The notes under the pieces: generated by a model
The model's database searches: none
Told to the model about the DNA's origin: nothing
The model's input: only the letters and a program-made list of their open reading frames with translations
Source of the DNA: Heteronotia binoei
Taxonomy: Eukaryota
Assembly (NCBI RefSeq): GCF_032191835.1
Contig: NC_083241.1
Location: 372,001-436,000, forward strand
DNA: 64,000 nt
Direction of reading: 5' to 3'
Translations under genes and position numbers: made by a program
In this document: piece after piece, positions 2,302-62,149 of the stretch
Layout of the letters: every line of letters begins with the position of its first letter
Position numbering within the stretch: position 1 is the first letter of the stretch

Positions 2302-9383
<7,082 letters not shown>

Positions 9384-9644
9384 GGGGCCTCCTCGGAGCC
9401 CGCTTGCCTGTGGAGTAGCCCGCTGGCCATCGCGGGCAGACCAATCGTGCAGCAGCAGCTGTCGGAAGGCGCGAAGAAGCCACTGGGGGGTGGATGAGAG
9501 GGGCCCCAAACTGCTGCCGTTCCGTTTCCTTTTCTGCTCCCTCTTCTCTTTGCTGCACTGGCCACGGATGCCGCCCTGGACTGGTTGAGGGTGGGGGTGG
9601 GGGGGCTTGTTTTCTAATGTTTTGTACATTTGGAGGAGTGGAAA

Positions 9645-9650
9645 AATAAA
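9645..9650 (+). promoter_or_regulatory. PDIA3 polyadenylation signal
   Basis: AATAAA about 260 nt after the stop codon. Confidence 0.65.
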
Positions 9651-12534
9651 CTACCCCCAATCCCGAGATGGGCTGTGCTTGATGAAGTGGCCCAGAGCCC
9701 TGCAAGAGCGTCAGTGGGGAGAGGACAGCCTGCTGAGGGAGCGGAGGGGGGGCGGGGGGAATATGGAGCTTTTGGCCTGGCCAGGTCTGGCCGGGGGAAC
9801 AGCTTCCGAGGGCAGCAGGAGACCAGTGGGCCCCCTATCCAGGGACGAATGGAGCTGCAACTCTCCTGAGCCCAGACCTTGGGACTCGCTTCAGGTGCTC
9901 CGGGGCTTGCCAGTGTTGCTGTCCTTGGGGAAATCCCTGCTGGGGGGGGGCGGGGCTGCTCCCTTAGCTTTTTTTAAAAGGGAGCAGGTGTGTGCCTGCT
10001 CCAGGAGGGGGATGTCCTGAAGCAGGGCTGCTGCCTAAAGACTGCGGAAGGGGAGAAGCTGACTTCCCCAGCTCACGGGGCATATTCTCCTCTTCCTATC
10101 CCTGGGCAGAGGGGGACTGGATGTTCCATGGCCCTAGACACATCTGCCACTCAATTCAAAAACAAGGGAAGAAGAACTAAGTCTGAATACAGCTTGAGAC
10201 ACCCTGGGGTGTACAACGCTTGTGTCCTTTGCAAGAGATGTGTTTCTAGTTCTCAGATCAAATGGCATCTGGTTTTTGCTGCATGTCGGGCCAGAGAATG
10301 GGGAAAGTCTGTCAGAGTCTGTCTGGCTGCAGCTGCTATCTCCTTCTAAGCTCTGTGCTTTCCCAGGAAGATGCCCGAGTGGCTGAAGCCTCTGCCAGCA
10401 AGGCATCTCTGCAGAAAGGTGGAGGAGCTGACGCTTTCCTGGGCTCCCGTCTGCTAAAACGTGTGCCACAGTTAGCTTTGTTTCCACACCACAGGAGAGG
10501 GGACAGAGTTCAGCTGAGCGTCTGGGGCCCTCCCTGCAGTCAAGGAAGCGCAGGGGGGAAGCCGGCACTCTCTGGCCTTCAAGGACAGTGGGTGCTTCGC
10601 TTGCAGAAGGGCAGCACGCCCAGCAACATACGAGGGGGTGAGGAGAAGAGGCACGAGCAGCCTGCACCCCTGGTTAGTGCCAAGGTGGCAGCAGCTTCCT
10701 TTCCCAGAGGGGTGTGCCCAGCGGCAGGCACAGACTGCAGCCTGAAGCCCTGGGCTGGTTGGACTGGCTCCTCCATCAGCCTCCAGGGGGCGGAAGGCTT
10801 TGCCGCCTTTCAGGGGAAGAGCTTTTGGGGCGGCTCCCAGCAGCCAGGGAGCAGTGCCTCTTCTTCCCAGCAGTGCTGGCCTTGCCTGCCAAAGGAAGCA
10901 CCTGGCTTCAGTGGGTGGGTGTGGCTGACATCCAGAGGAGGGGGAGGGCTGCCTGTCCCTCCCTGGTGGCTTCTGCTCCCGCACCTGGCCCAGATGGGGT
11001 CTCCAGTCACTCTCCACTCAGTGAGAGTCCCTGAGGGATGGGTCAGAACCAACGCAGTCCCAACTTTGCTCGGTATGTTCTGGGTGGCAGCACACAGGTG
11101 CCCCTGATGCTCAGTAGAGTCCCTCCCTGAGCCCCCGACTGCTCTGAAGCTGGGTGGATGCTGGGGTTAAAGCAGGATGTCTGAGGGAAGCTCCTGAGAG
11201 CCTCTTTCCTGGGTGGCCGGAGGATGCTGAGGCAGAAGGAAGCGTAATTACCTTGTTCTGCAACACCACACAGAATAAATGGCAGATCTCAGAGCTGCGA
11301 GATGTGAATGTCGGATGTTTGAGAGGAGCCAGACAGGAAGGGAGGCAAATAGATGGGGAGGGGGAGGTGGGAAGCAATTTTAAATGCCTCCTTCAAGCTG
11401 CTGGCTGGCTTGGCTGGGAGAAGTGCTTTAAAGAGAGCTGGGCGGGGGGGGGGGGCTTTGAGAGCCACCATTTGGCCACCCCCCTTTTAGGCTCGGCAGG
11501 TCTAGAGGGGAATCCCAATTCCAGGCAAAGCATGAGGAGGAATGCTTTCATCTTTTCTGTTCTTCAGAACGGAGAAACAGGTGGGGAATTGTGCATCGTT
11601 GCTGGTACTTGCTGGGGTTGGCTGCGTCTTAGGTGCAGCGGGCACAGGCTGGAGAAGGCTTACCCTAATGGGCTCATCAGTGCAGTAATGGGATTAGTGC
11701 CCTCGCTGCTCATGGTGCCTGCTGGCTCAGCCCATCTTGCTTCCGGCCGCTGTCTGCAGATGCCAAGAGCTGCCTTCTCCTTGCTGTTGATGTCTTGGGG
11801 GAAGGGGGGGAGGAGGGGGGGTGCCACCTTTGGGCCATGCTTGGCAAAGGGAGATGAGAGGGAGAGAGCAAGCAGCGGCCCCCACCGGGGTTGGAGAGTC
11901 CCCTTCCTGCTGCCCCCTATGGCCATTCGGGGGCCCCACCGCAGGAGGAGGAGGGCCTTCTACCAGCGCGTGGAACGCTTGCTGGGGGCGACCGGGGCTG
12001 ACTTCAAGTGGTTGTTTGCTGCTGACGGCTGGCAGGACCTGCTGGGTGAGATACGGGGTGGGGAGGGGGGAGGCATTGGAAAAGCAGGCCTGCTTCCCAG
12101 CAGCAGAGGCGGCAGTGTGGCAGGAAGGCTGGGGGGGCCACTGATGCCCCACTTTGCGTTAGGTCATCTGGGGACGCTGGCTTCCTCTGGCAAGCCCAGG
12201 ATCTGGCCCGGGGGGGGGGGCGGGTTGCACTTCAGCATTTCCTGGCACAGCTTTGCTGCTTGGGCAGCCCCCAGCCTTTCCGTGTTGCAGGTGGGTGATT
12301 CATACCCTCCCTCCCCCCCCGCAAAGAGTGCCAGGAGCTTCCCTGCAACTCCGGTGGGGGGACAAAGGGCAATTAACCGGGGTCGGGGGAGCTTATGCTG
12401 CCCCCAGTCAAGGTGTTACGTGGCTGCCACTCCTCCCCCCCCCCAAGTGGCTGTGGGGAGTGAGACTGCAGGGGGCCCCCTCACTGCCCTTTCCCCCCTT
12501 GGGCAAAGGGGAAGGTTTTCCCTCTGGCTCAGAG

Positions 12535-12751
12535 GAGGAGATGGGATTTATACCCTTGCCCTTCTCTGAGTGGCTCACCATCTCTTTTCCCTTCCTTTTG
12601 TGAAGAGACACCCTGTGAGGCAGGTGGGGCTGAGAGAGCAGCGCTTCCGAGAACTGTTACTGGCCCAAGGTCACCCAGCAGCTGCACATGGAGGAGTGGG
12701 AAATCAAAGCTGGTTCTCCCAAACTAGAGGCAGCGCTCCTAACCACCACCA
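12535..12751 (-). mobile_element. Squam3-like tRNA-derived SINE (older copy)
   Basis: Homologous to the SINEs at 26916-27188 and 59467. Confidence 0.75.
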
Positions 12752-13520
12752 GGGGTGTTGAACTCATTTGTTAGGAGGGCCGGATGTGCCCCAAATGGGA
12801 CTTCGTGGGGCCAGGCCCTGTGTGTCTTAAAATGAAAAGCCAGAGAAACTTTATAAAGGACACAGACAAACACAATTAAATATATGTTTTAACTTAAAAT
12901 ACAAACATGCTTAAAACTCTTCAAATATTTTGTTTAGAATGAAAAGGTGGAATGGTGGGATTTGGCAATGCAATTTTTAAAAAATAAAACAGGATCACAG
13001 CGGAAATTAAAAATATAAAATGCTCTAAGCTTGGGAAAACAGTGAAATGGCATTGCAAGCTTCTTCCCCCCCCCAAAGGGGGGGTCTACTCAGAATGGCA
13101 ATGGCTCTCCAGTGTAATATCCCCCTTTGACTGTGGGTCCCCAGGTTAGAGTTCTCAGTAGGTCAGGTCCATTCAGCAGAGACAAGAAGCTCCAAGAAGC
13201 ATGAGCTTCAGATGTCTATATAGGAACACTGAATGTGAAATTGGTCTCCACTCCATTGAAACACCCTGCAGAAACAGATAAAGTTGCAAGGAAAACATGG
13301 AATGGTTTTTCCTTTAAGGTCTCTGGGCACAGAGACCTTAATGGAAAATCCACTCCCCATTTTCCTGGTAGCTTTGCTTCCTGCTGCCGAGAACTGAAGG
13401 AGCAGGGAACTTAGTCAGCCTTGGAGCTTCAAAGGGTGCGGACAGGAGGGGGGGAGAAAAGAGCCCTGTGGGCCTGATTAAAACCCTGGGTGGGCCAGTT
13501 CCAGCCCCCTTCCCTGACAT
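12750..13520 (+). mobile_element. hAT-type MITE, copy 1
   Basis: Begins caggggtgttgaactc (Charlie-type TIR) and aligns by eye over ~700 bp with 20229-21070. Confidence 0.65.
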
Positions 13521-14176
13521 CCAGAAGCTCTCTTCCCTTGTGAAGAAAGAAGAGGCACCTGGAGGGCTGCCATGGCTAGGAGTGGAGCCAGGGTGGGTAC
13601 AGCATCTCCTGTTGCCCCGTCCTATCCACAATCTGGGGGGGGGGGTGTTCCTGGAAGCAGAATACTTGGCCACAGGACTCCCCCCTCTGCCTGCTGCCTC
13701 CTCACCTTGGTGGCCGGTTCCAGCTGGAGGGCTCTCTTCAGCAGCTCTGTGGCCGCCTGCTCCGCCAGCAGCTGAACAGAGAAGGAGGAGGAGGTCAGCT
13801 CTTTGCTGCCTCCAGCTTCCCCCCTCCCCGCGTCCGTCCTTCCATCCCTGCCAGGAGGCGCACCTTGCCTTTCCAGAAGAGGGCCTTGGGGGTGTGGGGA
13901 TCCAGGTGCAGGGCCTCATCGCAGGAGGCCAGGGCTTCCTCCCACAGCTGCAGCTGGGCGGCTGTACAGTTATTGAGACACTTGCCCCGGAGCTGTGGAT
14001 GTGAGCGGCAGAGCAACGGCAGCAGGGAGGGGGCCTGAGGTGGGTGTCCCTGGGAGGAGGAGAAAGAGGGGGCCTTCTGTCTTTTTTTTTGGGGGGGGGG
14101 GGCTCCTACCCAGCCTCATTGTCTACAATGGATCCATCGGCCCCCGCTTTCCTTCCAGTTCCCCCACTCCAGTCTA

Positions 14177-14360
14177 GGGCTGCCAATGTTGGGGGTGGTG
14201 GTGGTGGTCTGGAGCTCTACCCGAATTAGAGCTAATCTCCAGATTAGAGATCACTTTTTAGGGTTGCCAGCCTCCAGATGGGGCCTGGAGATCACCCAGA
14301 ACTCCTCTGGAGAAAATGGCTGCTTTGGAGAAAATGGCTGTCTCTCTCTCTGGCCTTGCA
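14177..14360 (+). mobile_element. TAGGGTTGCCA-type hAT-derived repeat fragments
   Basis: tagggctgcca / tagggttgcca termini. Related pieces occur at ~21515-21690 and ~42920. Confidence 0.4.
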
Positions 14361-14974
14361 CCCCACAGAGGTGCCCCCCCTCCCCACATTTCCAGGAGCC
14401 CTCCAGATGCCCCATTGCTTGCTGGGGGTCAAGGAGTGGGGGGGGGGGAAGGGGAGCAGTTGGGGGGCCCCCAAGAGCCTTCCCTCCTGGAGCTGAGCCA
14501 GGTGTCTCCTCCTCCGCCCCCTCCCTCAGGCTCTTCACGCTGAACTCTCCAGAATGGCTGGGCAGCAGAGGGGGGGCCAGCTGGCACTTGGAAGGGATTC
14601 ACCCGGACTGGCCAAGGGGGCAGACCCCCCAGTGGGAGCCAGGAGCCCCTGGAGTGCCCTCCCGCCCGAGTGAATCATCGCTGTTGCCTCCTGGGCAGGT
14701 GCTGGGAAGGCTGCGCCAGATTCTCCCAGGTAGGTAGCCCTGCTGGCTTCTCCGCAGCTGATCTGCGGCTCCTCTGAGCTCCCCCAGAAGTGGCTGGGCA
14801 GCCCTGGGCTGTGCAACTCCCTTCCTGGCAAGGAGGAAGGCTCCCCCCAGGCTGCCCCATGGGGGATGCATTGCAGAGGGGGGAGCAGCTGGGAGGCAAG
14901 GGCCTGGGGTCTCCCTTCAGTCACAGCCCCCTCCCCACATTGCACTTTTGATCCATGAAAAGGGAGCACAGCAG

Positions 14975-15495
14975 TAGGTTCTAATGGGATCAACATATCT
15001 ACAGGACCACCTCTCCCCCCATGTACCCCAAAGATCATGGAGATCTGGCTCACAACACCTACTGACTGTCCCTGGCCCTCAACCGGGGCCAGGGCCTTTT
15101 TGGCCTTGGCCCCAGCCTGGTGGAATCAGCTCCCTGTGGAGATCTGGTTCCTTACTGAACTGCTACCTTTTTGTAGGGCCTGTAAAACAGAGCTATTCCG
15201 CTGGGCCTTCGGTTGAGGCAGCGGGCGTCCTATTCTACCGCCTGGCCCCTCTGCTATGACATCACTTCTGCTGCGTTACCACCGTCTAAATTTCATTACA
15301 GTTAGACCTCAGTATGTTGTGAAATATATCCAACGATGCCACCATCTATAATTTGTTATAATTTGTATATAGCTTATTTGACTGTTTTATAATATTGCTT
15401 TTAATTGTATATTTTAAATTGATATTTTATTATGTTGTTATCCGCCATCAGCCCATTTCTGGGAAAATGTGGAATACAAATTAACTAAAATAAAT
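14975..15495 (+). mobile_element. L2 LINE 3' fragment with A-rich tail
   Basis: Encodes ..ALAPAWWNQLPVEI..FCRACKTELFRWAF, followed by an AT-rich tail. Confidence 0.7.
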
Positions 15496-16310
15496 AAAAA
15501 ACCGTCCAGCAGTTCAGCTACCTGGGGTGCATCATCTCCTCAGATGCTAAGATCGACAAGGAGATTGACAACAGGCTGGCAAAGGCAAACCGTGCGTTTG
15601 GCCGACTGCACAAAAGAGTATGGAGCAACAAGCATCTGAAAAAAGGCACAAAGATCAATGTTTACAAAGCGGTTGTGATGACAACCCTCATCTACGGCTC
15701 CGAATCGTGGGTTTTATACCGTCATCACCTGCGACTCCTTGAGCGCTTTCATCAGCGCTGCCTTCGCACCATCCTCAACATCCACTGGAGTGACTTTGTG
15801 ACCAACACTGAAGTTCTCAAGCGGGCGGAGGTTACCAGCATCGAGGCACTGCTGTTGAAGACGCAGCTGCGCTGGGCAGGGCATATTTCTAGGATGGAAA
15901 ACCACCGCCTTCCCAAGATTGCCCTGTATGGCGAACTCTCCACCGGCCATCGAAATAGAGGGGCACCAAAGAAGAGGTACAAGGACTCCTTGAAGAAATC
16001 CCTTGGCACCTGTCGCATCAACCATCACCAGTGGTCTGACCTAGCCTCAGATTGCAAAGCATGGAGGCACACCATCCACCAGGCTGTCTCTTCTTTTGAG
16101 AACGCACGCATAGCTGGTCTTGAGGACAAAAGGAGATTGAGGAAGAATCGCACTGCTACAGCACCAACCCCAAATCAGACTTTTCCCTGCAGCCACTGTG
16201 GCCGGACCTGCCTGTCCCGCATTGGTCTTGTCAGCCACCAGCGAGCCTGCAGCAGACGTGGACTATTGCACCCTTCTTAAATCTTCATTCGCGAAGCCAA
16301 GCCGAGAGAG
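15496..16310 (+). mobile_element. RTE-clade LINE, 5'-truncated, open reading frame intact
   Basis: Stop-free frame 15498-16280: TVQQFSYLGCIISSD..LIYGSESWVLY..QLRWAGHISRM..RLPKIALYGEL..GAPKKRYKDSLK, ending in the zinc knuckle CSHCGRTCLSRIGLVSHQRAC. Confidence 0.92.
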
Positions 16311-17189
16311 AAAATAAATTAAATAAAATTGCTTTGCTCGGTGCACAGCCGCTGGGACTTTCTGCATGACAGACTAGTCAGGCCGATGGCTCTTTCACCC
16401 CAGCAAAAGGAAGAGGGGAGAGGTGAACAAACGAGGGTCACCATCTCCCCGGCAGGAGCAGCCTCTCCGCTGGAGACCGTGTGGTTTTCTGTGCTGCAGC
16501 CTGTTTGGACTCCTGCCTGCCCTGAAGACTGCAACTTCCACACCTGCGCAGCCTCTGCTGCTTGCACCTGAGAGCCCCCCGGGAGTCCTGAAGGGAAGAG
16601 GGCTGACTGCAGCCCTGCTCTGAAGCTCTCTGTGCATTTTGGATGAAGCAGGAACACTCTTTCACTGGCTGGTTATGGGATGGCAGGCTTCATACACCCC
16701 TGTGAGAGCAGGAGGCGTCTTCCTAGCAACACCCTCTCTGGAGAAAGCCGCCTTCCTTCAACTTTTGCCTGCTGGGGCCTTCCTGCTCTAGTTAAGTCCA
16801 CAGGAGGAGGTGGGAGTGACTCTGTGTAAGATCGCTTCATCAGAAAGACCACCTCCTTCACCTTCTCAAGCAGCTGCAGGCTGATTTCTTCTCAAAAGAA
16901 AATCAACAGGGGGTGGCCTGGCCTCCTCGGGGTGGGAGCCCAGCCATTGGTCTCCTGCCAGCGGACCAGTGCCCCTCAGCCAGCGGAGCCAGGGGGAGGG
17001 AGGCTTCTTCATTGCCCCAGACATCCTCTGTCAGGAGTCGGATTTCCGTGCCTAAGTGCCCTTAGCATTGTGAGGGACAAGGATGGGGGTGCATTTGGGG
17101 CTAGTCTGCTCTGTCCTCCCCCCTCCTGTCAACCCCCCCACCCCCAGAGAGCTTGCAGAAGACCCCAAGTGCCTGACGTCATTTCCCCC

Positions 17190-17326
17190 TTTTATCCTCA
17201 CAATGACCCCTCCCTGCAAGGTAGGCCACGCTGAGAGCATGTGACTGGCCCCCCAGGAAGCTTCCGTGTCACGAGTTGGGATTCGAACCTGGTTCTCCCA
17301 GAGCCTAGTCTGCACTGAAACCACAA
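17190..17326 (-). mobile_element. Degenerate Squam3-like SINE
   Basis: gattcgaacctggttctccc (antisense B-box region) and ttttatcctcacaa tail. Confidence 0.55.
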
Positions 17327-17790
17327 TGGCAGGCGGGCTCTCTGCACCACGTAGAGAAGCAAGCACTGGGGGGGGGGGAACCTGCAACATCCCCATCCTC
17401 CCCCTCTGAGGGCATGCAAGCCTCTCTCAAAGCAAATCCCACCTGTGTGTCCGTCCAGGGAAATCCGGGGGCAGAACCGGACCCCGCAGCAGCTTGAAGC
17501 CAACGGCTGCTTCACATCGTGGTGCAACTGAACCCCCTGATGCTGTCATCATCCCCCAAGGCTCCCTCTGCCAGAGCCCACCGGGGGGGGGGCCCTGCCC
17601 CTCTGCCCTCTTGAGAAGGGCTGGGATTCTAGGCTTCCTGCCCCACCCCCAACACAGCACAGAACCCCAAAGAATGGGCCCTGCTTGGGAAACAGGCTCA
17701 CAAAGCTCGTGAGGGTGCACAGCCCCCACCCCACCCCCACCCCTCCTGGGGAAGAAGACAAGGAAGGCAGGCAGCAGCACAGAGCATGAC

Positions 17791-17796
17791 TTTATT
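17791..17796 (-). promoter_or_regulatory. SERINC4 polyadenylation signal
   Basis: AATAAA on the minus strand about 400 nt after the stop codon. Confidence 0.6.
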
Positions 17797-18189
17797 AGTA
17801 GGCCTGGCTGGATGTCCATGACCACAGTCGTCCTCCCCTCTGTCTTCCTCCACCACCACTGGTGCCCCTGGGGGGAGAGGGAGGAAGAGCGCCCTTCACC
17901 AGCATCACTCTGCCAGGACAAGGAAACCCCTCGGTTCTCCCCTTGGGTCCGGGGCTCCTCCTGCCACTGTGTTTTCTCTGCTCTCCCTGCTCCCCTTTAA
18001 CTTCTGCTGCCCACTCCGGGAGCAGCAGCCACGTCCTTCCCCGGTGCCCTCTGCCAGCTCCTCCCGGCTGGGAGCAGCAACACTGGTGCCCTTGGCACAG
18101 GAGGGTGGGGCTGCTGAGACCCCTCCCTGGGCACTCCCCCCCCCCCCCCGCGGGAGGTGCTGCAGGCAGCAAGAGTCTCTGGCCCCAGG

Positions 18190-21100
18190 CTATGCAGCTA
18201 CGCCAACCGGGTGAAGCACACATCGCCGCTGCCGCCGCCTCCGTATAATGCGCTGCCTGGGGTGGCGGGGCTTGCGAAGAGAGTCTGCTAGGCAGAGAGG
18301 AGCCAGCAGCAGCCAGAGGTAGAGCAGAACGCAGGCCCAGCCAGAGGCCACCTTGACCCAGAAGGTGGACCAGCTGCCGTGGGTGAAGGCCGTCTCCAGC
18401 TCCACACTCTCGTAGCTGCGGGGAGAGCGAGAGGCTGGTCAGAGGCCCCAGAGAGCCCCCTGCGGGTGGAGGGGCAGCCAGGAACCCTGCCTACCTGAAC
18501 CAGTTGGTGAGGGTCATCATGACGTACAAGGAGGCCAAGAAGAACACAAAGTGGAAGGCTGAGTAGCTGTAGACCACCCGGTCAGCCTCGTCAGAAGGCC
18601 CTGGGCCAGGGACAAAAACCCCTTCTCCTCCTCAGAACACACGCTCAGCTGGCCCCCTGCCTCTCCTGGGGCACGAAGGGAGCCAGCCAGGAGAAGCTGG
18701 GAAGCTCCTCCCACTCAGCCTGCGCCTGCGCCCCCTCCGCACTCACCTGCCCGCTCCTCCTCTTCCCTTCGGGCTGGGCAACAGAAGCAGCAGGAGGCCT
18801 CCTGCAAGGGGAAGAGTTCCACTCAGAGCCACAGGAGGGGGGCAGGGGCAGGACTCCAGCTCACAGTGGGAAAAGGAGGAACCCCCCTGCCTCCCCCCCC
18901 CCACAATGGTACAGATTGGTCTGGCAGCGAAGAAAGCAGGGCGCACACAGCTTACCTGGCACACACGTGGACCAAACCATTCCTGCAAGGGGCAATGGGC
19001 GCAGGCTTTGGCCCACGTTTGCAAGTGTCATGCAGGAGTGAGCACATGGCCTGTGGGCAGAACAGACCAAGGACCCACCAAGAGCAGCAGGCAGCCCCAC
19101 CCACCTTGACTTCCAAGCTGTAGACCTTGACCATCCACAGAGGCCCAAAGAGCTCCGCCAGGAGAGAGGCTTCGTTGCTGCAGTCAGAGGAAAAGGGTGA
19201 GGAGGAAGGGAGCCACCCCTGGGGCTTGGGGCCAGGCCTCCTCTCGACCCGCCGGCCCTGGACAGCATCCCAGCAGAGCAGCTGGGACAGACCCCCCTCA
19301 GGTGGCTCAGCTCAGCAGTGGGGAAAGGAGGCTGGGGTCAGTTTAGCAAGGAGAGTTGCTCCAGGGGGAAACTGTCATGAGGGGAGGAAGGCTTCCCCCG
19401 CTCCATCCCCCTCTCTCAAGCTTCCTTCTTCCCCACTCCAGGAGACAGAGGGCAGCACCCACCAGGCCAAGAGGACGCAGGCATACATGACTCCTGCTCC
19501 CAAGGCGGCCACAGCCGTGTTCTCCCTCTGCATCCCGTTCCCATCCCTGCCGATGCTGGGGAAGCAAATGGTGAGGTTTTGCCCCTGGTACTGCACTGTG
19601 GGTGAGAAACGAGACAGGCGGTGAGCAAGGCTGAGGATCCGGCCCTTCAGAGCTCTCTGGGAGGCAGCGGCTGTGTGCTTCTCCCTGTTGGCGTAGCTGC
19701 ATAGCCTGGCGCCAGAGACTCTCCTGCAGGGAGTGCCAAGGGAGGGGTCTCAGCAGCCCCGCCCCCCTGTGCCAAGGGCACCAGTGCTGCCGCTCCCAGC
19801 CAGGAGGAGCCAGCAGAGGGCGCCAGGGAGGGACGCGGCTGCTGCTCCCGGAGTGGCAAAGGGAGGTGAGAGAGACTCGGACCTTTCTCCGGAGGCCGGC
19901 TGGAGAGGGCGGAGAAGGTCAGGTACATGATGTAGCAGCAGATGATGGAGGCCTGCAGGGGCCCCGAACTAGCTGGTCCTGGGGGCAGAGGGGGAAAGAG
20001 TCAAGCCCCCCCAGCAGCCACAGCATCTGGACAGAACTCACAAGGGCCCTCCTGCTGGAGGTGGACATGGCAAGAAGACGGGGCCTTTGAAGCCACAACC
20101 CCTGAGATTCAACCCCCGCTGCCCAGTTCCACTCCAAGGGTCCAGCCCGCCAGCTCCCTAAAGAGACTTATGCTCATGCAAAGCAAGGGAATGCTGGGTG
20201 TTCTCCCCACCCCCCTTTCGACACATCACAGCGCTGCTGAACTCACTTGTTACGAGGGACATAAATGGGGTTTTGTGGGGCTGGGCCACGTGTGTCAGAA
20301 AATCTCATGCCAGCTGGCAAATATGTGAACTTCATAAAGAATACAAACACAGTTATATATACAAATGCTTAAAACTCTTGTTTAAAATGAAAAGGTGGGG
20401 GAATAGTGGGATTTGGCTAAGCAATTTTTAAAGCAAAGCAGCAAGAAAAAGCACAAGGATCACAGCAGAAACTAAAAATATATACTAAAAATATAACATG
20501 CTCTGAGGCTAGGAAAACATGAAATGGCTGGGCACTGCAAGCTTCTCCCCTCCCCCCATCCCCTGGTCTACCCAGATTGGCAATGGCTCTCCAGTGTAAT
20601 ATCCCCCTTTGGCTGTGGGTTCCCAGGTGAGAGTCCTCACTAGGCACCAGTTCTCAGATGCATTCAGCAGAGACAAGTTGGCTCAAAGCATCAGGCCTTT
20701 GTTTGCAAGGAGACAACTTCAGGAAGCAACAGCTTCCACTGGCCATACAAACACTGGAAAGTGAAACTACTTGAGCTCCACTACATTGAAATACTTTGCT
20801 GCTGAGATAAAGTTGCAATGAATATGTGGAATGGATTTTCCATTAAGGTTTCTGGGACCAGAGTGCTCTATCTGGGTACAAAGACTTTAGTGGAAAATCC
20901 ATTCTGTATTTGGCTGCAGCAGGCAAAAGGAGCTGGGAATTTCAGCAGCCTCCTCAGAGCTTCAAAAGGTGAGGACAGAAGGGGGTGGGGGCGGAGGAAA
21001 AAGCCACAGGCCCGACTGAAGCCCTGGGTGGGCTGGCTGCGGCCCGCAAGCCCTACGTTTGACACCCTTGCATGACATTTACATGCATATTTCCCCCTTG

Positions 21101-23313
21101 TCCTACTTAGCACTGATGCAGCCCTTCCTGCCCTCCTCCTCATGATCTGCCCAAGTTCACAGAATCAGCTTTGTCGTCAGATGGCCATCTAGCCTCTGCT
21201 TAGAAACCTCCAAGGAAGGAGAGCCCACCCACCACCTCCCAAGGAGAAAGCCTGTTCCACTGAGGAACCGCTCTAATGGCCAGGAAGTTCTTCCTAACCT
21301 TTAGCCAACAACTCTTTTGATTTAATTCAACCTGTTTGTTCTGGTCTGACCTTCTGGAGCCACAGAAAACAGCTCCACACCATCCTCTACAGAACAACCC
21401 TTCAAGGCATACCCGAACTGACCAGATCACCTCTCAGCCGCCTCCTCTCCAGGCTACACATGCCCACCTCCTTCAACCTTTCCTCATAGGACTTGGTCTC
21501 CTTGCCGCTGAGCAGCCTTGCCAACCTCCAGGTGATAGCTGGAGATCTCTTGGGACAGAAAGAGATCACCTGGAGAAAAGGGCTGCTTTGGAAGGTGGAC
21601 TCTGTGGCCTTAGACCCAACTGAAGTCTCTCTCCTCCCCAGGCTGTGCCTCCAAATTCTCCAGGTGTTTCCCAACCCAGAGCTGGCACCTCCACTGCTGG
21701 ATGAAATCCAGGGTTCCCTGGAGGAAGGCCCAACCCCCCAGGACGTCTCTGGCTTTGAGGAGGGGACCACTCACATGCCGCCAAGCCCCCTCCCCCAGCA
21801 CTCACGGAGGCGGGCACAGGGTGTGACGGACACCAAGGACACCAGGAGGCAGAGGCTGCCGTTCAGCGCCAGCAGCCCCTTGTTGAGGACGCAGCCGCCA
21901 GGGTGGGTGTAGAAGTGGCACAGGAAGGCGAAAGCCGTGACGGCCACCGTGTAGAAGCCCAGCGTGGCCAGGAGCACTGCCAGGCACCAGCGCTTGTCTC
22001 TGGAGGCGCCCGTCAGCCTGGCAAGGGAAAGGGCGTCAGAGGGCCTCGCCCACCCCAGGGAGCCCTCTCCTCCCTCCCTCCCTCGGAGCAGCCCTGCCCC
22101 CTCACCAGTTCTTGTTCCAGGTGTGGGCAAAGGCTGTGATCAGCACCAGCTGCACCAGGATGAAGGCAAAGCCGCCACAGACCCCCACCAAGTGCCAGGC
22201 TGCAGGGGGCAAAGCCACATAAGACGGCAGAGCTCAGCCCCGCGGCCCTTCGCCTCAGAGCGGCCTCGCCAGGCTTTCCGGCTCCCGCTCAGGAGGAGGA
22301 AGCAGGGGTGCTCCTTGCGTACCTCGGATGAAGCGCCGGTCAGGAATGAAGAAGGCTGCTGCCCAGAGACCCACCAGGATGAGAAGCTTGAGGAGCCAGA
22401 ACCTGCAAGAGCCCCCGCCCCGGTCAGACACCTCCCCCACTCCAAAGGGCTAGGAAGTGCCCCCCCCCCCGTCCAGAGCCGCCCTCCTCCTTCCCCTCCT
22501 CACCCGTTGTGCAGCAGGGCTCGGAAGTTGGTGCTGGACTTGACGTTGACCAGGAAAGCGGCCTGGCCCAGGTGGAAGCAGGCGGTGCCAAAGCAGACTC
22601 TGTAGACAGCTGAGTAGCCCACCGGGAGGTTGCAGCTGGGCCCTCCCTGGAGATGCTCACACAGCACTGCATAAAGAGGCACCTGGGGGGGAAAGGCAGC
22701 CTGGGCTGTTGGGCGGCTGCTGCCGGTAGAGGCCGGCTTGGGAGGCAGGGCTGAGCGCTGAGACAGGCAAGTGCAAGGGAGAGCCAGGGGTCATGGGGCA
22801 TGAGCAGAGGGCCACCGCTGGGGACAGCAGCACCAGGCCTCCCCCCACCCCCACTCACGTTCTCTTGGAGGGCTTCCACCACCGTGCGAGAGAGCAGGAA
22901 GCAGCAGACAGCACAGGCCAAGACATGGAAGAGCACGTAGAGGAGCCGCGTGGCCGTGGACACCTTCAGGTGGAGGCTGCAGCAGCAGCGGCAGGGGCAG
23001 GAGGCACTGCAGGGAGCTGGGCTGCAGCAGCAGACCTGAGCGGGGGGAGAGAGGCACGGGACCGGGGGCAACTCCTTTGGCTCACTCCTTCTCCGGGACG
23101 GACTGCAGGGCCTCCCTCCCCCGCAGCAGGTGGGCTTACCTGGCTACACATCTCGCAAGAGGGTCTGCACCTCGACCCCTCAGCCCACAGGACTCTGGCC
23201 AGCCCACCCCACAAGCTCCTCAGCCCCAGGGGGCCGCCTCTGCGCCAAGGATTAGGGGGGATTGGGAGGCTCAGCCGCCATCTGCTGCTGGAGGGGGGGG
23301 GCTGGGCCAGCAT
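18190..23313 (-). CDS. SERINC4: Serine incorporator 4
   Basis: Minus exons: exon 1 ends at 23140 (ATG at 23313 or 23151, uncertain), then 23035-22859, 22682-22504, 22402-22323, 22199-22106, 22017-21806, 19978-19883, 19595-19463, 19177-19105, 18801-18747, 18600-18495, 18415-18190. Motifs [86 protein letters not shown]. Confidence 0.95.
20229..21070 (+). mobile_element. hAT-type MITE, copy 2 (in SERINC4 intron 6)
   Basis: Degenerate TIRs (..ctgaactcacttgtt and gtttgacacccttg). Shares its body with 12750-13520. Confidence 0.65.
21160..21500 (-). mobile_element. CR1 LINE 3' fragment
   Basis: Minus strand encodes [22 protein letters not shown], a CR1 ORF2 C-terminal motif. Confidence 0.85.
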
Positions 23314-23754
23314 GCCCCCTCCTCCCCACCAGCTGCTCCAGGGCAAAAACACACCGGCAGCCCTGGGAGGAGGCAGGGGTCAGAAATCAGCCTCCCCTTC
23401 CACCTGGTTAGTGCTCAGCCCCCCACTCAAGAGACGTCCTCCCTGTCTGGGCAGATCAAGGGGCTCCCTCCCTTCCTTCCGGCTGGCGGGGAGGATATTT
23501 GCCGCCTCGGCACTGTCTTCTGACCCATCTCCCCTGCCTCCTTCCTGCCCAAAGGGAAAGGCTCTGTGGGACCCCCCCTCCAGCTGCCGAGGTGGCTGGG
23601 GAAGCCAGTGGAGGGGGGGGAGGCAGAGCTCTCAGAGCCCCCAGCCATCCCGATNNNNNNNNNNNNNNNNNNNNNNNNNNNNNNNNNNNNNNNNNNNNNN
23701 NNNNNNNNNNNNNNNNNNNNNNNNNNNNNNNNNNNNNNNNNNNNNNNNNNNNNN

Positions 23755-26640: not shown

Positions 26641-29167
26641 TGCCCGCTGCTTGGCTTGGCAAAGTGCTTTCAAGAGAGCGATGGCTTCTCCAAGTCAGCC
26701 GGGGGGGGGGCGGGCTTCGAGAGCCACACAATGTGTGGAGGAGCTCCATGCGGCTCCTGAACCACTGTTTGGACACCCCTGCTATAGACTACCAGATGCC
26801 AATTTTGATCTGTGTTAAGGGGTTGTCAATAAATACAGTAATTCTGCCCTTATACAAACCCCCACTGAGGCCCCATTTGGAATAATGTGTACAGTTTGGG
26901 ATGACACCTTTTAAAAGAAGATATTGGATTTATATCCCGCCCTCCACTCCGAAGAGTCTCAGAGCGGCTCACAATCTCCTTTCCCTTCCTCCCCCACAAC
27001 AGACACCCTGGGAGGTGGGTGGGGCTGGAGAGGGCTCTCACAATAGCTGCCCTTTCAAGGACAACCTCTGCCAGAGCTACGGCTGACCCAAGGCCATTTC
27101 AGCAGGTGCAAGTGGAGGAGTGGGGAATCAAACCCGGTTCTCCCAGATAAGAGTCCGCACACTTAACCACTACACCAAACTGGCTCTCCCCAAACTGGCA
27201 TTGAAGAGTTGGGAACAGGAAAGAAAAAACATGTCTTGCTTTTTGGTTTCAGTAATGGTGATTGAGGTATGAATAATAGAGTTGGAAGGGACCTCCAGGA
27301 CCATCTAGTCCAACCCCCTGCAAAATGCAGGAAACCCACAAATACCTCCCCCCCACACACACCCAGTGACACTTGCTCCATGTAAGAAGATGAGGGCGGG
27401 GGACCTTCCACGGCCCCTGGCCAAACTGGGCTTGAGAAAAATTGCTCCCTGATCCCAAAGTGGCAAACAGTTTCCCTGGGTGTGTGAGAAAGGGCCATGA
27501 GAACTAAGCATGATGCAACCCTTCCTGCCCTCTTCTCACAATCTGCCTAAATTCAAAGAATCGTAACCAAACCAATATAACCCTTTGAACAGCTGCTTCA
27601 AACATACGTTTTTGCTAATACAAATAATATTTTTTCTTACAAAATCTCTCTGATACTTAATTCTATAGTGAATCAGCCTTCTCTACAACACAGAAAGAAC
27701 TTTTCACCTTCTCCCTTACTGGCAGTGGATGTATGACAATGTACTGCTGGACTCAGAGTTGCTTCTGTTTCTTTACACAGTGTGTCGCTGCCTTGTAGGG
27801 CTCACTGCCATGAACTGGGATGAGATGGATTTAAAAAGGGGGTTGGATAGATCTAAGCAGCCCCATGGCGCAGAGTGGTAAAGCAGCAGTACTGCAGTAC
27901 TGTGATCTGAACTCTCAGCTCACGACCAGAGTTCGATTCCAGCAGAAGCTGGATTCAGGTTGCCGGCCCAAGGTTGACTCAGCCTTCCATCCTTCCGAGG
28001 TCGGTAAAATGAGTACCCAGCTTGCTAGGGGGAAGAGTGTAAAAGACTGGGGAAGGCGATGGCAAACCACCCCGTAAAAAGTCTGCCGTGAAAATGTTGT
28101 GAAACGTCACCCCAGAGTCAGAAACAACTGGTGCTTGCACAGGGGACCTTTCCTTTCCTGGATAGATCTGGTTTTGGCTATTAGCCATGGTAGTAAAATG
28201 GAGTCTCTGGATTCAGATGCAGCATCCCTCTGATCATGCTGTGTTGCGGAGCAATCAGCAGGCCCCCATGTGGGCTTTCATCTGGCATCTGAGTAAGGAA
28301 AGAGGACGCTGGACTGTGTGTGTGCGATCCAGCATGGCTCCTCTAAGGGATCTTATGTGTCAAGTATATGATGTGGGTAGTCTGGCAGATGGACACTTGA
28401 TGAATTAATCACACATTCTGGAATCGCCTCTCCCCCCTAACAGGCCATGTCTGTGATCGGAGACAGAAGATCCAGAGAGCAGAAAGCAAGGCAGGAGCGG
28501 TGAGTTCTTCCTGTCATCGGCTGCTTTCTCAGCCACCCCGTAAGAGCTGCCGTGTGCCAGCTGTGGGCTATGAAGGTGGCTTGGTGCCAAAGCTGATCCC
28601 TATAGTTACTGCAAGCGTTTGGCGTTTTCCATAAAGGTTTTACACCTGTTTTAACTGCAGGAGGAGGCTGTACATGTTTCAAATGTTAAGAAATTAGTGT
28701 AACCATAAATCTTTAATTGCATCTTTTTGCTTGCTTTACAGCAGCAGAAACCATGGGGGAGGGCAGGATGTAAGTCAAATAAAATCAAACTTCAGTTTGC
28801 TAGTTCAGCACCAGAATTCTGCTTCTGTTCAGTGTGCTGCAGCCCAAATGCTGCCGGTTGTGGAGCATCAGACTTTATTGTGGAGTTGGATGTTGTCTGG
28901 GGGCCCTGAATAGCTTTTCCTTTTGCTTTCAGAGAGAAGGAACTGGCCAAAGTTACAATCAAGAAAGAAGATTTGGAGCTGATTGTGAGTCTTAGGTTTG
29001 CCAGTGGAAACAGCTTTCTGCAGGTATGACACAGCAGGCGCAGCCCCAACTCTTTTTTGTTTTCCCCACAGATGAATGAGATGGAGATATCTAGGGCAGC
29101 AGCTGAGCGCAGCTTACGGGAACACATGGGAAATGTCGTGGAGGCACTGATCGCCCTTACCAATTGA
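26319..29167 (+). CDS. HYPK: Huntingtin-interacting protein K (129 aa)
   Basis: Exons 26319-26504, 28444-28499, 28933-28984, 29072-29167. KPRKHDSGAADLERVTDYAEEKEI..AMSVIGDRRSREQK..EKELAKVTIKKEDLELIMNEMEISRAAAERSLREHMGNVVEALIALTN*. AATAAA at 29403-29408. Confidence 0.98.
26800..26915 (+). mobile_element. CR1 LINE RT fragment, interrupted by later SINEs
   Basis: ILPLYKPPLRPHLE..CVQF motif. A further CR1-like piece (gatggatttaaaaaggggttggat) lies near 27800-27855. Confidence 0.6.
26916..27188 (-). mobile_element. Squam3-like SINE, full length
   Basis: Reverse complement reads gagagccagtttggtgtagtggttaagtgtgcggactcttatctgggagaaccgggtttgattcccc..gggatataaatccaatatcttc, with A-box, B-box and tail. 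Confidence 0.9.
27275..27560 (-). mobile_element. CR1 3' end fragment
   Basis: atagagttggaagggacctccaggaccatctagtccaaccccctgc. Confidence 0.75.
27857..28159 (+). mobile_element. Sauria/Squam1-like tRNA-derived SINE with RTE(BovB)-like tail
   Basis: A-box tggcgcagagtgg, B-box gagttcgattcc, and tail accccagagtcagaaacaactgg..ggggacctttcctttcc. Confidence 0.8.
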
Positions 29168-36863: not shown

Positions 36864-37098
36864 GAGTTGGTTTTAAACCCTGCCCTTCAGTACCCAAAGG
36901 GGTCTCAGAGCAGCCTACCATCACCTTCCCTTCCTCTTCCCACAACAGACACCCTCCCTTTGAGGGTCAAGATTGTTCCGAGAGAACTGTGACTAACCCA
37001 AGGTCACCCAGCTGGCTGCATGTGGAGAAGTGGGGAATCAAACCTGGTTCTTCAGATTAGAGTCTACTGGTCTTAACCATGATAGCAAGCTGGGTCTC
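36864..37098 (-). mobile_element. Degenerate Squam3-like SINE
   Basis: cccacaacagacaccct..ccaaggtcacccag..tggggaatcaaacctggttc. Confidence 0.7.
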
Positions 37099-47100: not shown

Positions 47101-50100
47101 ACTCCTCCAATTGCAGCTGCTGGAATGGCCTTGGGTCAGCCAGAGCTCTCTTATCTGGGAGAACCGGGTTTGATTCCCCACTCCTCCACTTGCAGCTGCT
47201 GGAATGGCCTTGGGGTCAGCCAGAGCTCTCTTATCTGGGAGAACCGGGTTTGATTCCCCACTCCTCCAATTGCAGCTGCTGGAATGGCCTTGGGTCAGCC
47301 AGAGCTCTCTTATCTGGGAGAACCGGGTTTGATTCCCCACTCCTCACTTGCAGCTGCTGGAATGGCTTGGGTCAGCAGAGCTCTCTTATCTGGGAGAACG
47401 GGTTTGATTCCCCACTCCTCCACTTGCACCTGCTGGAATGGCCTTGGGTCAGCCAGAGCTCTCTTATCTGGGAGAACCGGGTTTGATTCCCCACTCTCCA
47501 CTTGCACCTGCTGGAATGGCGTTGGGTCAGCCAGAGCTCTCTTATCTGGGAGAACCGGGTTTGATTCCCCACTCCTCCACTTGCAGCTGCTGGAATGGCC
47601 TTGGGTCAGCCAGAGCTCTCTTATCTGGAGAACCGGGTTTGATTCCCACTCCTCCACTTGCAGCTGCTGGAATGGCCTTGGGTCAGCCAGAGCTCTCTTA
47701 TCTGGGAGAACCGGGTTTGATTCCCCACTCCTCCACTTGCACCTGCTGGAATGGCGTTGGGTCAGCAGAGCTCTCTTATCTGGGAGAACCGGGTTTGATT
47801 CCCCACTCCTCCACTTGCAGCTGCTGGAATGGCCTTGGGTCAGCCAGAGCTCTCTTATCTGGGAGAACCGGGTTTGATTCCCCACTCCTCCACTTGCACC
47901 TGCTGGAATGGCCTTGGGTCAGCCAGAGCTCTCTTATCTGGGAGAACCGGGTTTGATTCCCCACTCCTCCACTTGCACCTGCTGGAATGGCGTTGGGTCA
48001 GCCAGAGCTCTCTATCTGGGAGAACCGGGTTTGATTCCCCACTCCTCCACTTGCAGCTGCTGGAATGGCCTTGGGTCAGCCAGAGCTCTCTTATCTGGGA
48101 GAACCGGGTTTGATTCCCCACTCCTTCACTTGCAGCTGCTGGAATGGCCTTGGGTCAGCCAGAGCTCTCTTATCTGGGAGAACCGGGTTTGATTCCCCAC
48201 TCCTCCAATTGCAGCTGCTGGAATGGCCTTGGGTCAGCCAGAGCTCTCTTATCTGGGAGAACCGGGTTTGATTCCCCACTCCTCCACTTGCAGCTGCTGG
48301 AATGGCCTTGGGTCAGCCAGAGCTCTCTTATCTGGGAGAACCGGGTTTGATTCCCCACTCCTCCAATTGCAGCTGCTGGAATGGCCTTGGGTCAGCCAGA
48401 GCTCTCTTATCTGGGAGAACCGGGTTTGATTCCCCACTCCTCCACTTGCAGCTGCTGGAATGGCCCTTGGGTCAGCCAGAGCTCTCTTATCTGGGAGAAC
48501 GGGTTTGATTCCCACTCCTCCACTTGCACCTGCTGGAATGGCCTTGGGTCAGCCAGAGCTCTCTTATCTGGGAGAACCGGGTTTGATTCCCCACTCCTCC
48601 ACTTGCACCTGCTGAATGGCGTTGGGTCAGCCAGAGCTCTCTTATCTGGGAGAACCGGGTTTGATTCCCCACTCCTCCACTTGCAGCTGCTGGAATGGCC
48701 TTGGGTCAGCCAGAGCTCTCTTATCTGGGAGAACCGGGTTTGATTCCCCACTCCTCACTTGCAGCTGCTGGAATGGCCTTGGGTCAGCCAGAGCTCTCTT
48801 ATCTGGGAGAACGGGTTTGATTCCCCACTCCTCCAATTGCAGCTTGCTGGAATGGCCTTGGGTCAGCCAGAGCTCTCTTATCTGGGAGAACCGGGTTTGA
48901 TTCCCCACTCCTCCACTTGCAGCTGCTGGAATGGCCTTGGGTCAGCCAGCAGGCTCTTGCAGTGCTTGTCCTTGAAAGGGCAGCTTCTGGGAGAGCCCTC
49001 TCAGGCCCACCCACCTCACAGGGTGTCTGTTGTGGGGGAGGAAGATAAAGGAGATTGTGAGCCGCTGAGACTCTTGAGTGGAGGGTGGGATATAAATCCA
49101 GTGTCGTCGTCTTCCTCTATCTACACTGCAGCAGAGGCCGCCCCAGAAGCGCCAGTGGTGTCTGTTGGAGGAGGCAGGGGCGAGAGTTTGAGGGGGGGCG
49201 GCGGCAGGGTGCTGTGCGGCAGTTGGCCATCTCCCCTCCAACCAGTTCCCTTGGGGGGCCCCTGCTGCTGCTCCTTGGGGGTCTGTCGCTGGGATCTTCT
49301 TTGGAGAGCAGAGGAGCTGTCTCAGTCCCTGCAGCCTGCTGGGAAGGGGGGCTTAGCTGGGCCGGCACACCCCTTCGGCCACCAGAGGCTGTTACTTGGG
49401 GCACAGCCTGGGGGCCAAATCGGGTGCCCCCTGGGAGGGTGGGGGCCACCCCTCCTGGGAGATGGAAATCGCATGGGAGCAGCCGCTGCCCTTCCTGCAT
49501 TCAGCTGAGCAGGGGGACCGGGCCCAGGTCCAGGAAGGCCTTTGGATAGGCCAGGAGGCTTCCAGCCTCAGTCCGCCCATGGAGCAGCCTGCCTCTTGGT
49601 CTCGATGGGCGTCTCTGACTGCGCCCCCTCTCTCTCTCCCTCCAGATCTTGGATGACTATTACCTCCTGTGCCACCGAGCTGTGGCAAAGCGGGTCGCTC
49701 TCCCCCCACAGAGCCTGGCACAGCTCCTTGAGCAGGGAGCCCGAGGTAAGTGGGTCAGCAAGTGGGGGGTGTGTGTGGCTTCTGGTCTTTGTGTCTGGCC
49801 CCAGCCTCTGCCCCNNNNNNNNNNNNNNNNNNNNNNNNNNNNNNNNNNNNNNNNNNNNNNNNNNNNNNNNNNNNNNNNNNNNNNNNNNNNNNNNNNNNNN
49901 NNNNNNNNNNNNNNNNNNNNNNNNNNNNNNNNNNNNNNNNNNNNNNNNNNNNNNNNNNNNNNNNNNNNNNNNNNNNNNNNNNNNNNNNNNNNNNNCTCTC
50001 GGCTCCCAGCCCTGCATGGAGCATCCTGGAGGGGCCACCTGTTGGCTTTGGGTGCCCCTACCCAGTCTTGCTGAGAGGTTCTGTCTGGCTGCTTTTGAAG

Positions 50101-59466: not shown

Positions 59467-60056
59467 CCAGTTTGGTGTAGTGGTTAAGTGTGTGGACTCT
59501 TATCTGGGAGAACCGGGTTTGATTCCCCACTCCTCCACTTGCAGCTGCTGGAAAGGCCTTGGGTCAGCCAGAGCTCTGGCAGAGGTTGTCCTTGAAAGGG
59601 CAGCTGCTGTGAGAGCCCTCTCCAGCCCCACCCACCTCACAGGGTGTCTGTTGTGGGGGAGGAAGGGAAAGGAGATTGTGAGCCGCTCTGAGACTCTTCG
59701 GAGTGGAGAGAGGGATATAAATCCAATATCTTCATCTACCTCACAGGGTGTCTCTTGTGGGGGAGGAAGGGAAAGGAGATTGTGAGCCGCTCTGAGACTC
59801 TTCAGAGTGGAGGGAGGGATATAAATCCAATATCTTCATCTACCTCACAGGGTGTCTGTTGAGGGGGAGGAAGGGAAAGGAGATTGTGAGCCGCTATGAG
59901 ACTCTTCGGAGTGGAGGGCGGGATATAAATCCAATATCTTCATCTACCTCACAGCGTGTCTGTTGTGGGGGAGGAAGGGAAAGGAGATTGTGAGCTGCTC
60001 TGAGACACTTTGGAGTGGAGGGCGGGATATAAATCCAATATCTTCTTCATCTTCTC
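59467..60056 (+). mobile_element. Squam3-like SINE with four tandem 3' tails
   Basis: Normal head and body, then ctcacagggtgtc..ggatataaatccaatatcttc starting at 59636, 59740, 59844 and 59948 (104-bp period). Confidence 0.9.
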
Positions 60057-61636: not shown

Positions 61637-62149
61637 NNNNNNNNNNNNNNNNNNNNNNNNNNNNNNNNNNNNNNNNNNNNNNNNNNNNNNNNNNNNNNNN
61701 NNNNNNNNNNNNNNNNNNNNNNNNNNNNNNNNNNNNNNNNNNNNNNNNNNNNNNNNNNNNNNNNNNNNNNNNNNNNNNNNNNNNNNNCTTTGCCTTGCTG
61801 CCAGCAGGGAGCAGGTTTCTGGGGGTGTCAAGACTGGGAGAAGAGCCGGCTGCAGCCGTGCAGATGACCAGGGAAGGAACCCCAGAGCATCATGCACCTG
61901 CCTCTCCAGGAGGAGCAGCAGCGCAAGGCCAGCAGGGCAGAGGGGGGCTGTGGACTCAACGGGCAGTTAAACCGCAGGGCCCTTGTGGGGAAAACCCAAG
62001 GACCAGCAGCCAGGTGCGTGGCCCTGCAGCCACCTGGAAACTTCCTGTGCCCATATCTTTGGGCTTGGGAAGAGACAGGTTGGCCGGGGCAGCAGTGGGT
62101 GTGACTGGCAGGGCCCAGACTTCCCAAGTGGGGGAGGGGGGAGGAATGA

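What the first reader, a model, noticed from the sequence alone, without database searches (positions are those of the whole stretch)
12046..14529. Internal inversion plus missing PPIase exons inside the FKBP relic
Seen: the first exon (ends 12045) and the post-TPR exon (starts 14530) are on the plus strand. The two TPR exons that belong between them (13992-13864, 13771-13706) are on the minus strand with intact splice sites. I found no PPIase-domain exon on either strand. The left breakpoint interval holds a SINE and a hAT MITE (12535-13520), and the right one holds a hAT-derived fragment (14177-14360). Inference: a local inversion/deletion, possibly transposon-mediated, disabled the gene or followed its loss.
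Basis: partly seen in the sequence, partly recalled or inferred. Interest (0 to 1): 0.7.

Follow-up and report, generated by a model that had tools for sequence, protein, structure and literature searches.

The report
Flipped exon pair in dead FKBP8-like gene
Between the lizard genes PDIA3 and SERINC4 lie three leftover exons of an FKBP8-like gene, two of them facing the opposite way from the third and the enzyme-domain exons gone; this is an ordinary rearranged dead gene, and the flip could not be checked against raw reads.

Summary
The core observation holds.

- **Minus-strand exons:** 13992-13864 and 13771-13706 are clearly FKBP8-like TPR exons. Both have open frames, and a 92-bp GT-AG intron separates them.
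- **Plus-strand exon:** the exon starting at 14530 follows a good acceptor. It opens with ALHAELSRM, the best match in the whole window to the residues that I recall following TPR3 in human FKBP8. That motif comes from memory, not from a tool.
- **Missing exons:** no PPIase (FKBP_C) or further TPR exon was found on either strand from 9.4 to 19.5 kb.

Three parts of the finding are weaker.

- **"First exon" (11919-12045):** its resemblance to FKBP8 is at noise level, so the left breakpoint has no firm bound.
- **Post-TPR exon:** it is better read as the whole last coding exon (14530-14733), with a premature TGA at 14671.
- **Transposon mediation:** there is no support. A SINE and a TIR element are present, but no inverted transposon pair brackets the flipped block.

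One inversion of the TPR2-TPR3 pair, plus deletion of upstream exons, is the most parsimonious history. No N runs lie nearby. No sequencing run was listed and no relative could be fetched, so misassembly and timing remain untested.

The scan also noted this same stretch as s1-328453; its follow-up is withheld.

Interest is low.

The parts
9228..9383 (+). Context: last coding exon of PDIA3 (ends ...KEDL, then stop)
   Evidence: PDB phmmer hit to human PDIA3 chain residues 443-477 of 481, E 5e-12; ORF listing
11919..12045 (+). GWQDLL, GTGAGA donor, ends in phase 1). Relation to FKBP8 is unproven.
   Evidence: Translation. No Pfam family. No relatives by word search. Motif rank at noise level. 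CpG o/e 0.25-0.36.
12563..12749 (+). SINE copy
   Evidence: About 50 blastn hits elsewhere in the window, including 59477-59693, 26957-27173, 36903-37079 and the 45.5-49.1 kb tandem array
12750..13516 (+). Non-autonomous TIR element (MITE-like), starting CAGGGGTGTTGAAC. The 3' end is degraded and the superfamily was not verified.
   Evidence: Second copy at 20230-21045, 66% identity over 861 aligned columns; terminal inverted repeats aligned
13706..13771 (-). TPR3 exon (LLAEQAATELLKRALQLEPATK), phase 0 to 0. AG acceptor, GTGAGG donor. By my recollection of the human sequence it is about 4 residues shorter than human FKBP8.
   Evidence: Translation. FKBP8 motif ILRAALKLEPS has its best window-wide match here: 33 against 25 for the next site, and reached in 2 of 200 null windows. 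Splice sites read.
13772..13863 (-). 92-bp GT-AG intron between the two TPR exons, so this is an unprocessed gene copy
   Evidence: Sequence read
13864..13992 (-). TPR2 exon (LRGKCLNNCTAAQLQLWEEALASCDEALHLDPHTPKALFWKGK), phase 0 to 0. It has a 2-residue deletion relative to human FKBP8.
   Evidence: PDB: human FKBP8 chains 5mgx_E and 9xj8_E, query 1-43 against chain 180-224, E about 1e-4. Pfam TPR_1/TPR_2/TPR_11, below cut-off. Motif KCLNNLAASQLKL scores 48 against 28 for the next site, reached in 0 of 200 null windows.
14264..14386 (+). Interspersed-repeat fragment of unknown class inside the right breakpoint interval
   Evidence: 67% match over 132 columns to 21518-21640, E 2e-6
14530..14733 (+). 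Last coding exon on the opposite strand. Acceptor ccctccctcag, phase 0, starts ALHAELSRM. Premature TGA at 14671-14673, terminal TAG at 14731-14733.
   Evidence: Translation. Best window-wide match to the recalled FKBP8 motif TIHAELSKL: 31 against 21, and 31 or more in 3 of 300 null windows. No PDB or Pfam support.
18193..18631 (-).
   Evidence: Pfam Serinc PF03348, E 3e-14 and 2e-11, profile positions 357-433 of 434

Best explanation
The 8.8-kb space between the convergent genes PDIA3 (+) and SERINC4 (-) holds the unprocessed remains of a TPR-containing FKBP8-like gene. Only three recognisable exons survive: TPR2, TPR3 and the last coding exon.

The gene originally ran on the plus strand. A small inversion flipped the block that carries TPR2, its 92-bp intron and TPR3. 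The right breakpoint lies in 13995 to about 14505; the left breakpoint lies somewhere left of 13704. The exons for the PPIase domain and TPR1 were deleted, either in the same break-and-rejoin event or separately.

The last exon also carries a premature TGA. The locus is therefore non-functional. The inversion is a neutral or disabling lesion produced by ordinary double-strand-break repair, not a transposon-guided event.

Shown: exon identities, exon strands, and the absence of other FKBP or TPR exons. Inferred: the ancestral orientation, that a single inversion was responsible, the order of events, and that the assembly is correct here.
For: - **TPR2 exon:** aligns end to end with human FKBP8.
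- **Motif ranks:** three FKBP8 motifs taken from that tool output each have their window-wide best match in the two minus-strand exons, in protein order.
- **Plus-strand exon:** the exon at 14530 is the window-wide best match (31 against 21) to the residues I recall directly following TPR3 in FKBP8. It starts right after a strong acceptor. A score of 31 or more anywhere in 64 kb arises in about 1% of simulated windows, and here it lies 540 bp from TPR2.
- **Phases:** the exon phases are 0-0-0, so the three exons fit one reading frame.
- **Parsimony:** the present order TPR3(-), TPR2(-), last exon(+) follows from a plus-strand gene by one inversion. A minus-strand ancestor needs at least two events.
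- **No other exons:** no FKBP_C or extra TPR exon on either strand across 9.4-19.5 kb.
- **Assembly:** no N run lies nearer than 23655, so this is not a mis-oriented scaffold piece.
- **Flanking genes:** verified.
Against: - The plus-strand exon rests on a 9-residue motif that I recalled from memory. HMMER found no FKBP8 match for that exon in the PDB.
- By paralogy with the human FKBP8-ELL pair (from memory), the ancestral gene might be expected on the minus strand.
- No reads and no relatives could be obtained.
- The Pfam scans have limited power on single decayed exons.
Confidence: 0.6

Rival explanations
1. The gene ancestrally ran on the minus strand, so the TPR2-TPR3 pair keeps its original orientation. 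It is the last exon that was moved and flipped, for example by two nested inversions or an inverted transposition.
For: From memory, human FKBP8 lies just upstream of ELL on the same strand, and ELL3 lies tail-to-tail with PDIA3. A paralogue next to ELL3 would then be opposite to PDIA3. The plus-strand 'exon 1' has no statistical support.
Against: It needs at least two rearrangements where one suffices. No TPR1 or PPIase exon lies on the minus strand upstream (13993-19500).
Confidence: 0.15
2. Assembly artefact: the block carrying the two TPR exons was inserted backwards by the assembler, and the real genome has all three exons co-oriented.
For: No read-level check was possible (none was listed). 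Long G and C homopolymer runs lie in both breakpoint intervals.
Against: No N runs flank the block. No long inverted repeats that could mislead an assembler bracket it. The missing PPIase exons show the locus is rearranged in any case.
Confidence: 0.12
3. There is no inversion. The relic is just a two-exon minus-strand fragment, either a remnant or a partial duplicate of an FKBP8-type gene, and the plus-strand 'exons' are chance resemblances.
For: HMMER and Pfam give no support for any plus-strand exon. Exon 1 and the KWL motifs are at noise level.
Against: ALHAELSRM is a 10-point outlier over the rest of the window. It lies within 0.6 kb of the TPR exons, directly after an acceptor, in the matching phase, at exactly the next position in the protein. 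The joint chance is roughly 1e-3 or less, if the recalled motif is right.
Confidence: 0.08

Closest known systems
FKBP8 (FKBP38), the TPR-containing, tail-anchored FK506-binding protein
   Same: The TPR2 exon aligns over its full length with human FKBP8, including the KCLNN and KALF.KGK motifs. TPR3 ends ...L.LEP..K. The next exon starts .(L/I)HAELS(R/K)(M/L). Tail length up to the stop is similar: 67 codons here against about 72, the latter from memory.
   Different: About 49% identity in TPR2. Relative to human FKBP8, TPR2 has a 2-residue deletion and TPR3 an apparent 4-residue deletion (the latter from memory). There is no PPIase domain and no TPR1, the exons are on discordant strands, and there is a premature stop. 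The locus is PDIA3-SERINC4, not the ELL/KXD1 neighbourhood (from memory), so it is a paralogue relic and not FKBP8 itself.
Unitary or unprocessed pseudogenes carrying micro-inversions
   Same: Introns are retained, exons are lost, and a sub-2.5-kb block is flipped inside a dead gene. The same genome has another flipped exon in a decayed REV1 copy (scan note s1-340692, not checked here).
   Different: Here neither breakpoint is mapped and no outgroup or read evidence is available.
Inversions mediated by transposons, through recombination between inverted copies or alternative hAT transposition
   Same: A SINE and a TIR element lie in the left interval and a repeat fragment lies in the right interval.
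   Different: The elements at the two sides are not homologous to each other in inverted orientation. No split element or duplicated target site marks a junction.

Membership tests
FKBP8/FKBP38-type immunophilin gene | FKBP_C (PPIase) domain | tested here: not met
   No PF00254 hit at E<=5 in 89 segments of 11500-15000, or at E<=1 in 150 flank segments, both strands. PDB check of 12163-12600(+) was negative.
FKBP8/FKBP38-type immunophilin gene | Three TPR motifs with best similarity to FKBP8 | tested here: inconclusive
   TPR2 and TPR3 are present and FKBP8-like. No TPR1 exon was found.
FKBP8/FKBP38-type immunophilin gene | C-terminal tail with a transmembrane anchor | tested here: inconclusive
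   The start of the last exon matches the recalled FKBP8 tail. The hydrophobic stretch after the premature TGA is short and decayed. KWL motif hits are at noise level.
Unprocessed (unitary) pseudogene | Retains introns and carries disabling lesions | tested here: met
   92-bp GT-AG intron between TPR2 and TPR3. Exons are missing, strands are discordant, and there is a premature TGA at 14671.
Unprocessed (unitary) pseudogene | An intact orthologue at the same locus in other species | not testable with these tools
   No vertebrate genome collection is on hand. All protein word searches came back blank, and the profile search returned only multi-TPR proteins.
Chromosomal micro-inversion | Consecutive exons of one gene on opposite strands in reversed order | tested here: met
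   Order on the plus strand is TPR3(-) 13706-13771, TPR2(-) 13864-13992, last exon(+) 14530-14733.
Chromosomal micro-inversion | Junctions confirmed by reads or by an un-inverted outgroup | not testable with these tools
   The look-up of sequencing runs listed none, so read laying could not be used. ORFs of the region are not on record in other assemblies.
Transposon-mediated inversion | Homologous elements in inverted orientation, or a split element, at the two junctions | tested here: not met
   SINE and TIR element against the right interval, both orientations: scores within shuffle range. The pair 12457-12498 / 14443-14487 scores 19, about the 95th percentile of GC-rich controls.
hAT MITE | Terminal inverted repeats, an 8-bp target duplication, and multiple copies | tested here: inconclusive
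   TIR CAGGGGTGT(T/C)(G/A)AAC is seen at three of four ends, and there are two copies in the window. No clear 8-bp duplication. No transposon library was available to name the superfamily.

The most novel reading that the evidence does not exclude
The flipped TPR2-TPR3 pair keeps open frames and canonical splice sites because it was captured by a minus-strand transcript, for example read-through from SERINC4, which lies upstream on that strand. If so, the inversion created new exons rather than only wreckage.
Probability: 0.03. Interest if true: 0.5.

Novelty: new member of a known kind. Interest (0 to 1): 0.22.

Why it matters
If the inversion is real, it adds structural detail to the loss of an FKBP8 paralogue in this lizard lineage. 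It would also give a marker (two junctions) that could date the loss across geckos. On its own, a small inversion inside a dead gene is ordinary. Its main practical value is as a caution for annotators: exon-by-exon homology can place parts of one relic on both strands.

Tried and rejected
**Searches that gave no usable relative or read evidence**
- Profile search of the TPR2 exon against 1.84 billion representatives: only long multi-TPR proteins, no FKBP8-type sequence.
- Three word-index protein searches, all blank: exon 1 inside the 471-aa open frame, TPR2 inside its 106-aa open frame, and TPR2 alone. No full-length orthologue could therefore be fetched, and no cross-species dot-plot was possible.
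- Exact look-ups of two mechanical ORFs of the region in public assemblies: not on record.
- Sequencing runs: none was listed.
- ESM Atlas: only generic TPR clusters for TPR2; the machine was busy for the last exon.
- Papers: 'FKBP16' returns plant FKBPs and an AIP alias. No paper prints the FKBP8 tail peptides.

**Ideas tested and rejected**
- A direct duplication linking 12436-12520 and 14787-14850 (shared KWL...GK.EG): DNA alignment was not above shuffles.
- A flanking inverted repeat as an inversion signature: not above GC-rich controls.
- A PPIase remnant at about 12350-12440(+): no PDB or Pfam support.
- A twin-priming retrocopy: rejected because the TPR exons keep their intron.

- The spliced exons were never joined. 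Each exon was searched on its own by reference.
Full report
**Setting**

The window carries the last coding exon of PDIA3 on the plus strand at about 9252-9383. Its PDB match to human PDIA3 covers residues 443-477 with E 5e-12. The last two SERINC exons lie on the minus strand at 18193-18631, matching Pfam Serinc profile positions 357-433 of 434. The finding therefore sits in an 8.8-kb space between two convergent genes. The window's N runs are at 23655-23754, 49815-49995, 61113-61253 and 61637-61787; none is near the finding.

**The minus-strand exons are real and FKBP8-like**

Exon 13992-13864 translates to 43 open codons and 13771-13706 to 22. Reading on the minus strand, both have AG acceptors behind pyrimidine tracts and GT donors (GTGCGC and GTGAGG). 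A 92-bp intron separates them.

The first exon's best natural, single-stretch PDB hit is human FKBP8 (5mgx_E, 9xj8_E). Query residues 1-43 align to chain residues 180-224 at E about 1e-4, with a 2-residue deletion in the window exon. Higher-ranked hits are designed consensus TPR proteins that win only by summing many weak repeats. Pfam sees TPR_1, TPR_2 and TPR_11 below their cut-offs.

I took three FKBP8 motifs printed and scored them against all six frames of the 64-kb window:

| Motif | Best site | Score | Next best | Null windows reaching it |
|---|---|---|---|---|
| KCLNNLAASQLKL | 13983(-) | 48 | 28 | 0 of 200 |
| IKALFRKGK | 13890(-) | 29 | 25 | 17 of 200 |
| ILRAALKLEPS | 13744(-) | 33 | 25 | 2 of 200 |

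So TPR2 and TPR3 of an FKBP8-type gene lie on the minus strand, in protein order.

**The plus-strand exon at 14530**

This exon follows ccctccctcag and opens ALHAELSRM. Pfam and PDB searches give nothing for it. That is expected for a match of nine residues.

I recall that TIHAELSKL directly follows ...LKLEPSNK in human FKBP8. This is my memory, not a tool result, and no paper in the library prints the peptide. Against that motif, 14530(+) scores 31 and the next best site in the window scores 21. In 300 first-order Markov windows, a maximum of 31 or more occurred 3 times.

The site lies 540 bp from TPR2, directly after an acceptor. It is also in phase 0, which matches the phase-0 end of TPR3. 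Together these make chance unlikely, roughly 1e-3 or less.

Read further, the frame has a TGA at 14671-14673 and a terminal TAG at 14731-14733. That gives 67 codons, against about 72 from the same point in human FKBP8 (from memory). I therefore read 14530-14733 as the whole last coding exon with one premature stop.

- GWQDLLG is the window's best match to the recalled EWLDILG, but only by 25 against 23 and 23.
- Pfam finds nothing for it.
- A word search using the 471-aa open frame that contains it, scored on residues 250-300, found no relative.
- CpG observed/expected there is 0.25-0.36, so no CpG island remains.
- Hits to the recalled anchor motif IPWKWLFG at 11997, 12436 and 14781 are all at the noise ceiling.

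The left breakpoint therefore has no firm left bound.

**Missing exons**

I cut 11500-15000 into 89 stop-to-stop segments of at least 22 codons on both strands and scanned each against Pfam. Only the TPR2-bearing segment matched TPR families, and FKBP_C did not appear at E<=5. The same was done for 150 segments of at least 30 codons from 9400-11520 and 14980-19500. Only Serinc appeared. A stretch at about 12350-12440(+) that looked faintly like the first PPIase strand found no FKBP in the PDB. The power of these scans on single decayed exons is limited.

**Repeats**

- 12563-12749 is a SINE with dozens of copies in the window.
- 12750 to about 13516 is a TIR element. It has a 66%-identical copy at 20230-21045 and termini CAGGGGTGT(T/C)(G/A)AAC.
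- 14264-14386 matches 21518-21640 at 67%.
- I could not verify that any of these is a hAT element.

Local alignments of the SINE and the TIR element against the right interval, in both orientations, stay within shuffle range. The best flanking inverted pair is 12457-12498 against 14443-14487, with score 19. That is about the 95th percentile of GC-rich control pairs from the same window. Transposon mediation is therefore unsupported, though not excluded.

**History**

The present order on the plus strand is TPR3(-), TPR2(-), last exon(+). From a plus-strand gene this needs one inversion of the TPR2-TPR3 block. From a minus-strand gene it needs at least two events.

There is a counter-argument from paralogy with the human FKBP8-ELL pair (from memory), which would predict a minus-strand ancestor.

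The exons are about 49% identical to human FKBP8, yet they are free of stops and keep their splice sites. This suggests long evolution as a functional paralogue followed by fairly recent death, rather than an old neutral partial duplicate. That is an inference.

**What could not be done**

- No sequencing run was listed, so the assembly could not be checked.
- No orthologue could be fetched (exact ORF look-ups).
- The exons were never joined into a spliced model. Each was searched on its own by reference.

**Verdict**

This is an ordinary rearranged pseudogene, and the inversion still needs read-level confirmation.

Noticed in passing
window 14671-14673: In-frame TGA inside the plus-strand last exon of the relic. 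The frame then runs 19 more codons (IIAVASWAGAGKAAPDSPR) to a TAG at 14731-14733. This suggests the tail and a decayed membrane anchor lie in one exon.
   Followed up: partly
window 15498-16277 (+): 260-codon open frame ending in a zinc-knuckle-like ...CSHCGRTCLSRIGLVSHQRAC... It looks like the 3' part of a LINE ORF2. No Pfam family at E<=0.01.
   Followed up: partly
window 9400-19500: No ELL-family or SERF match between PDIA3 and SERINC4, where human carries ELL3 and SERF2 (human order from memory). Pfam scans show only Serinc.
   Followed up: partly
window 13280-13375: 46-nt arms, 80% complementary, 4 nt apart: a hairpin inside the TIR element. It is also present in the second copy near 20809-20863.
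   Followed up: no
window 11270-11280: An AATAAA about 1.9 kb after the PDIA3 stop codon, a plausible PDIA3 polyadenylation signal.
   Followed up: no
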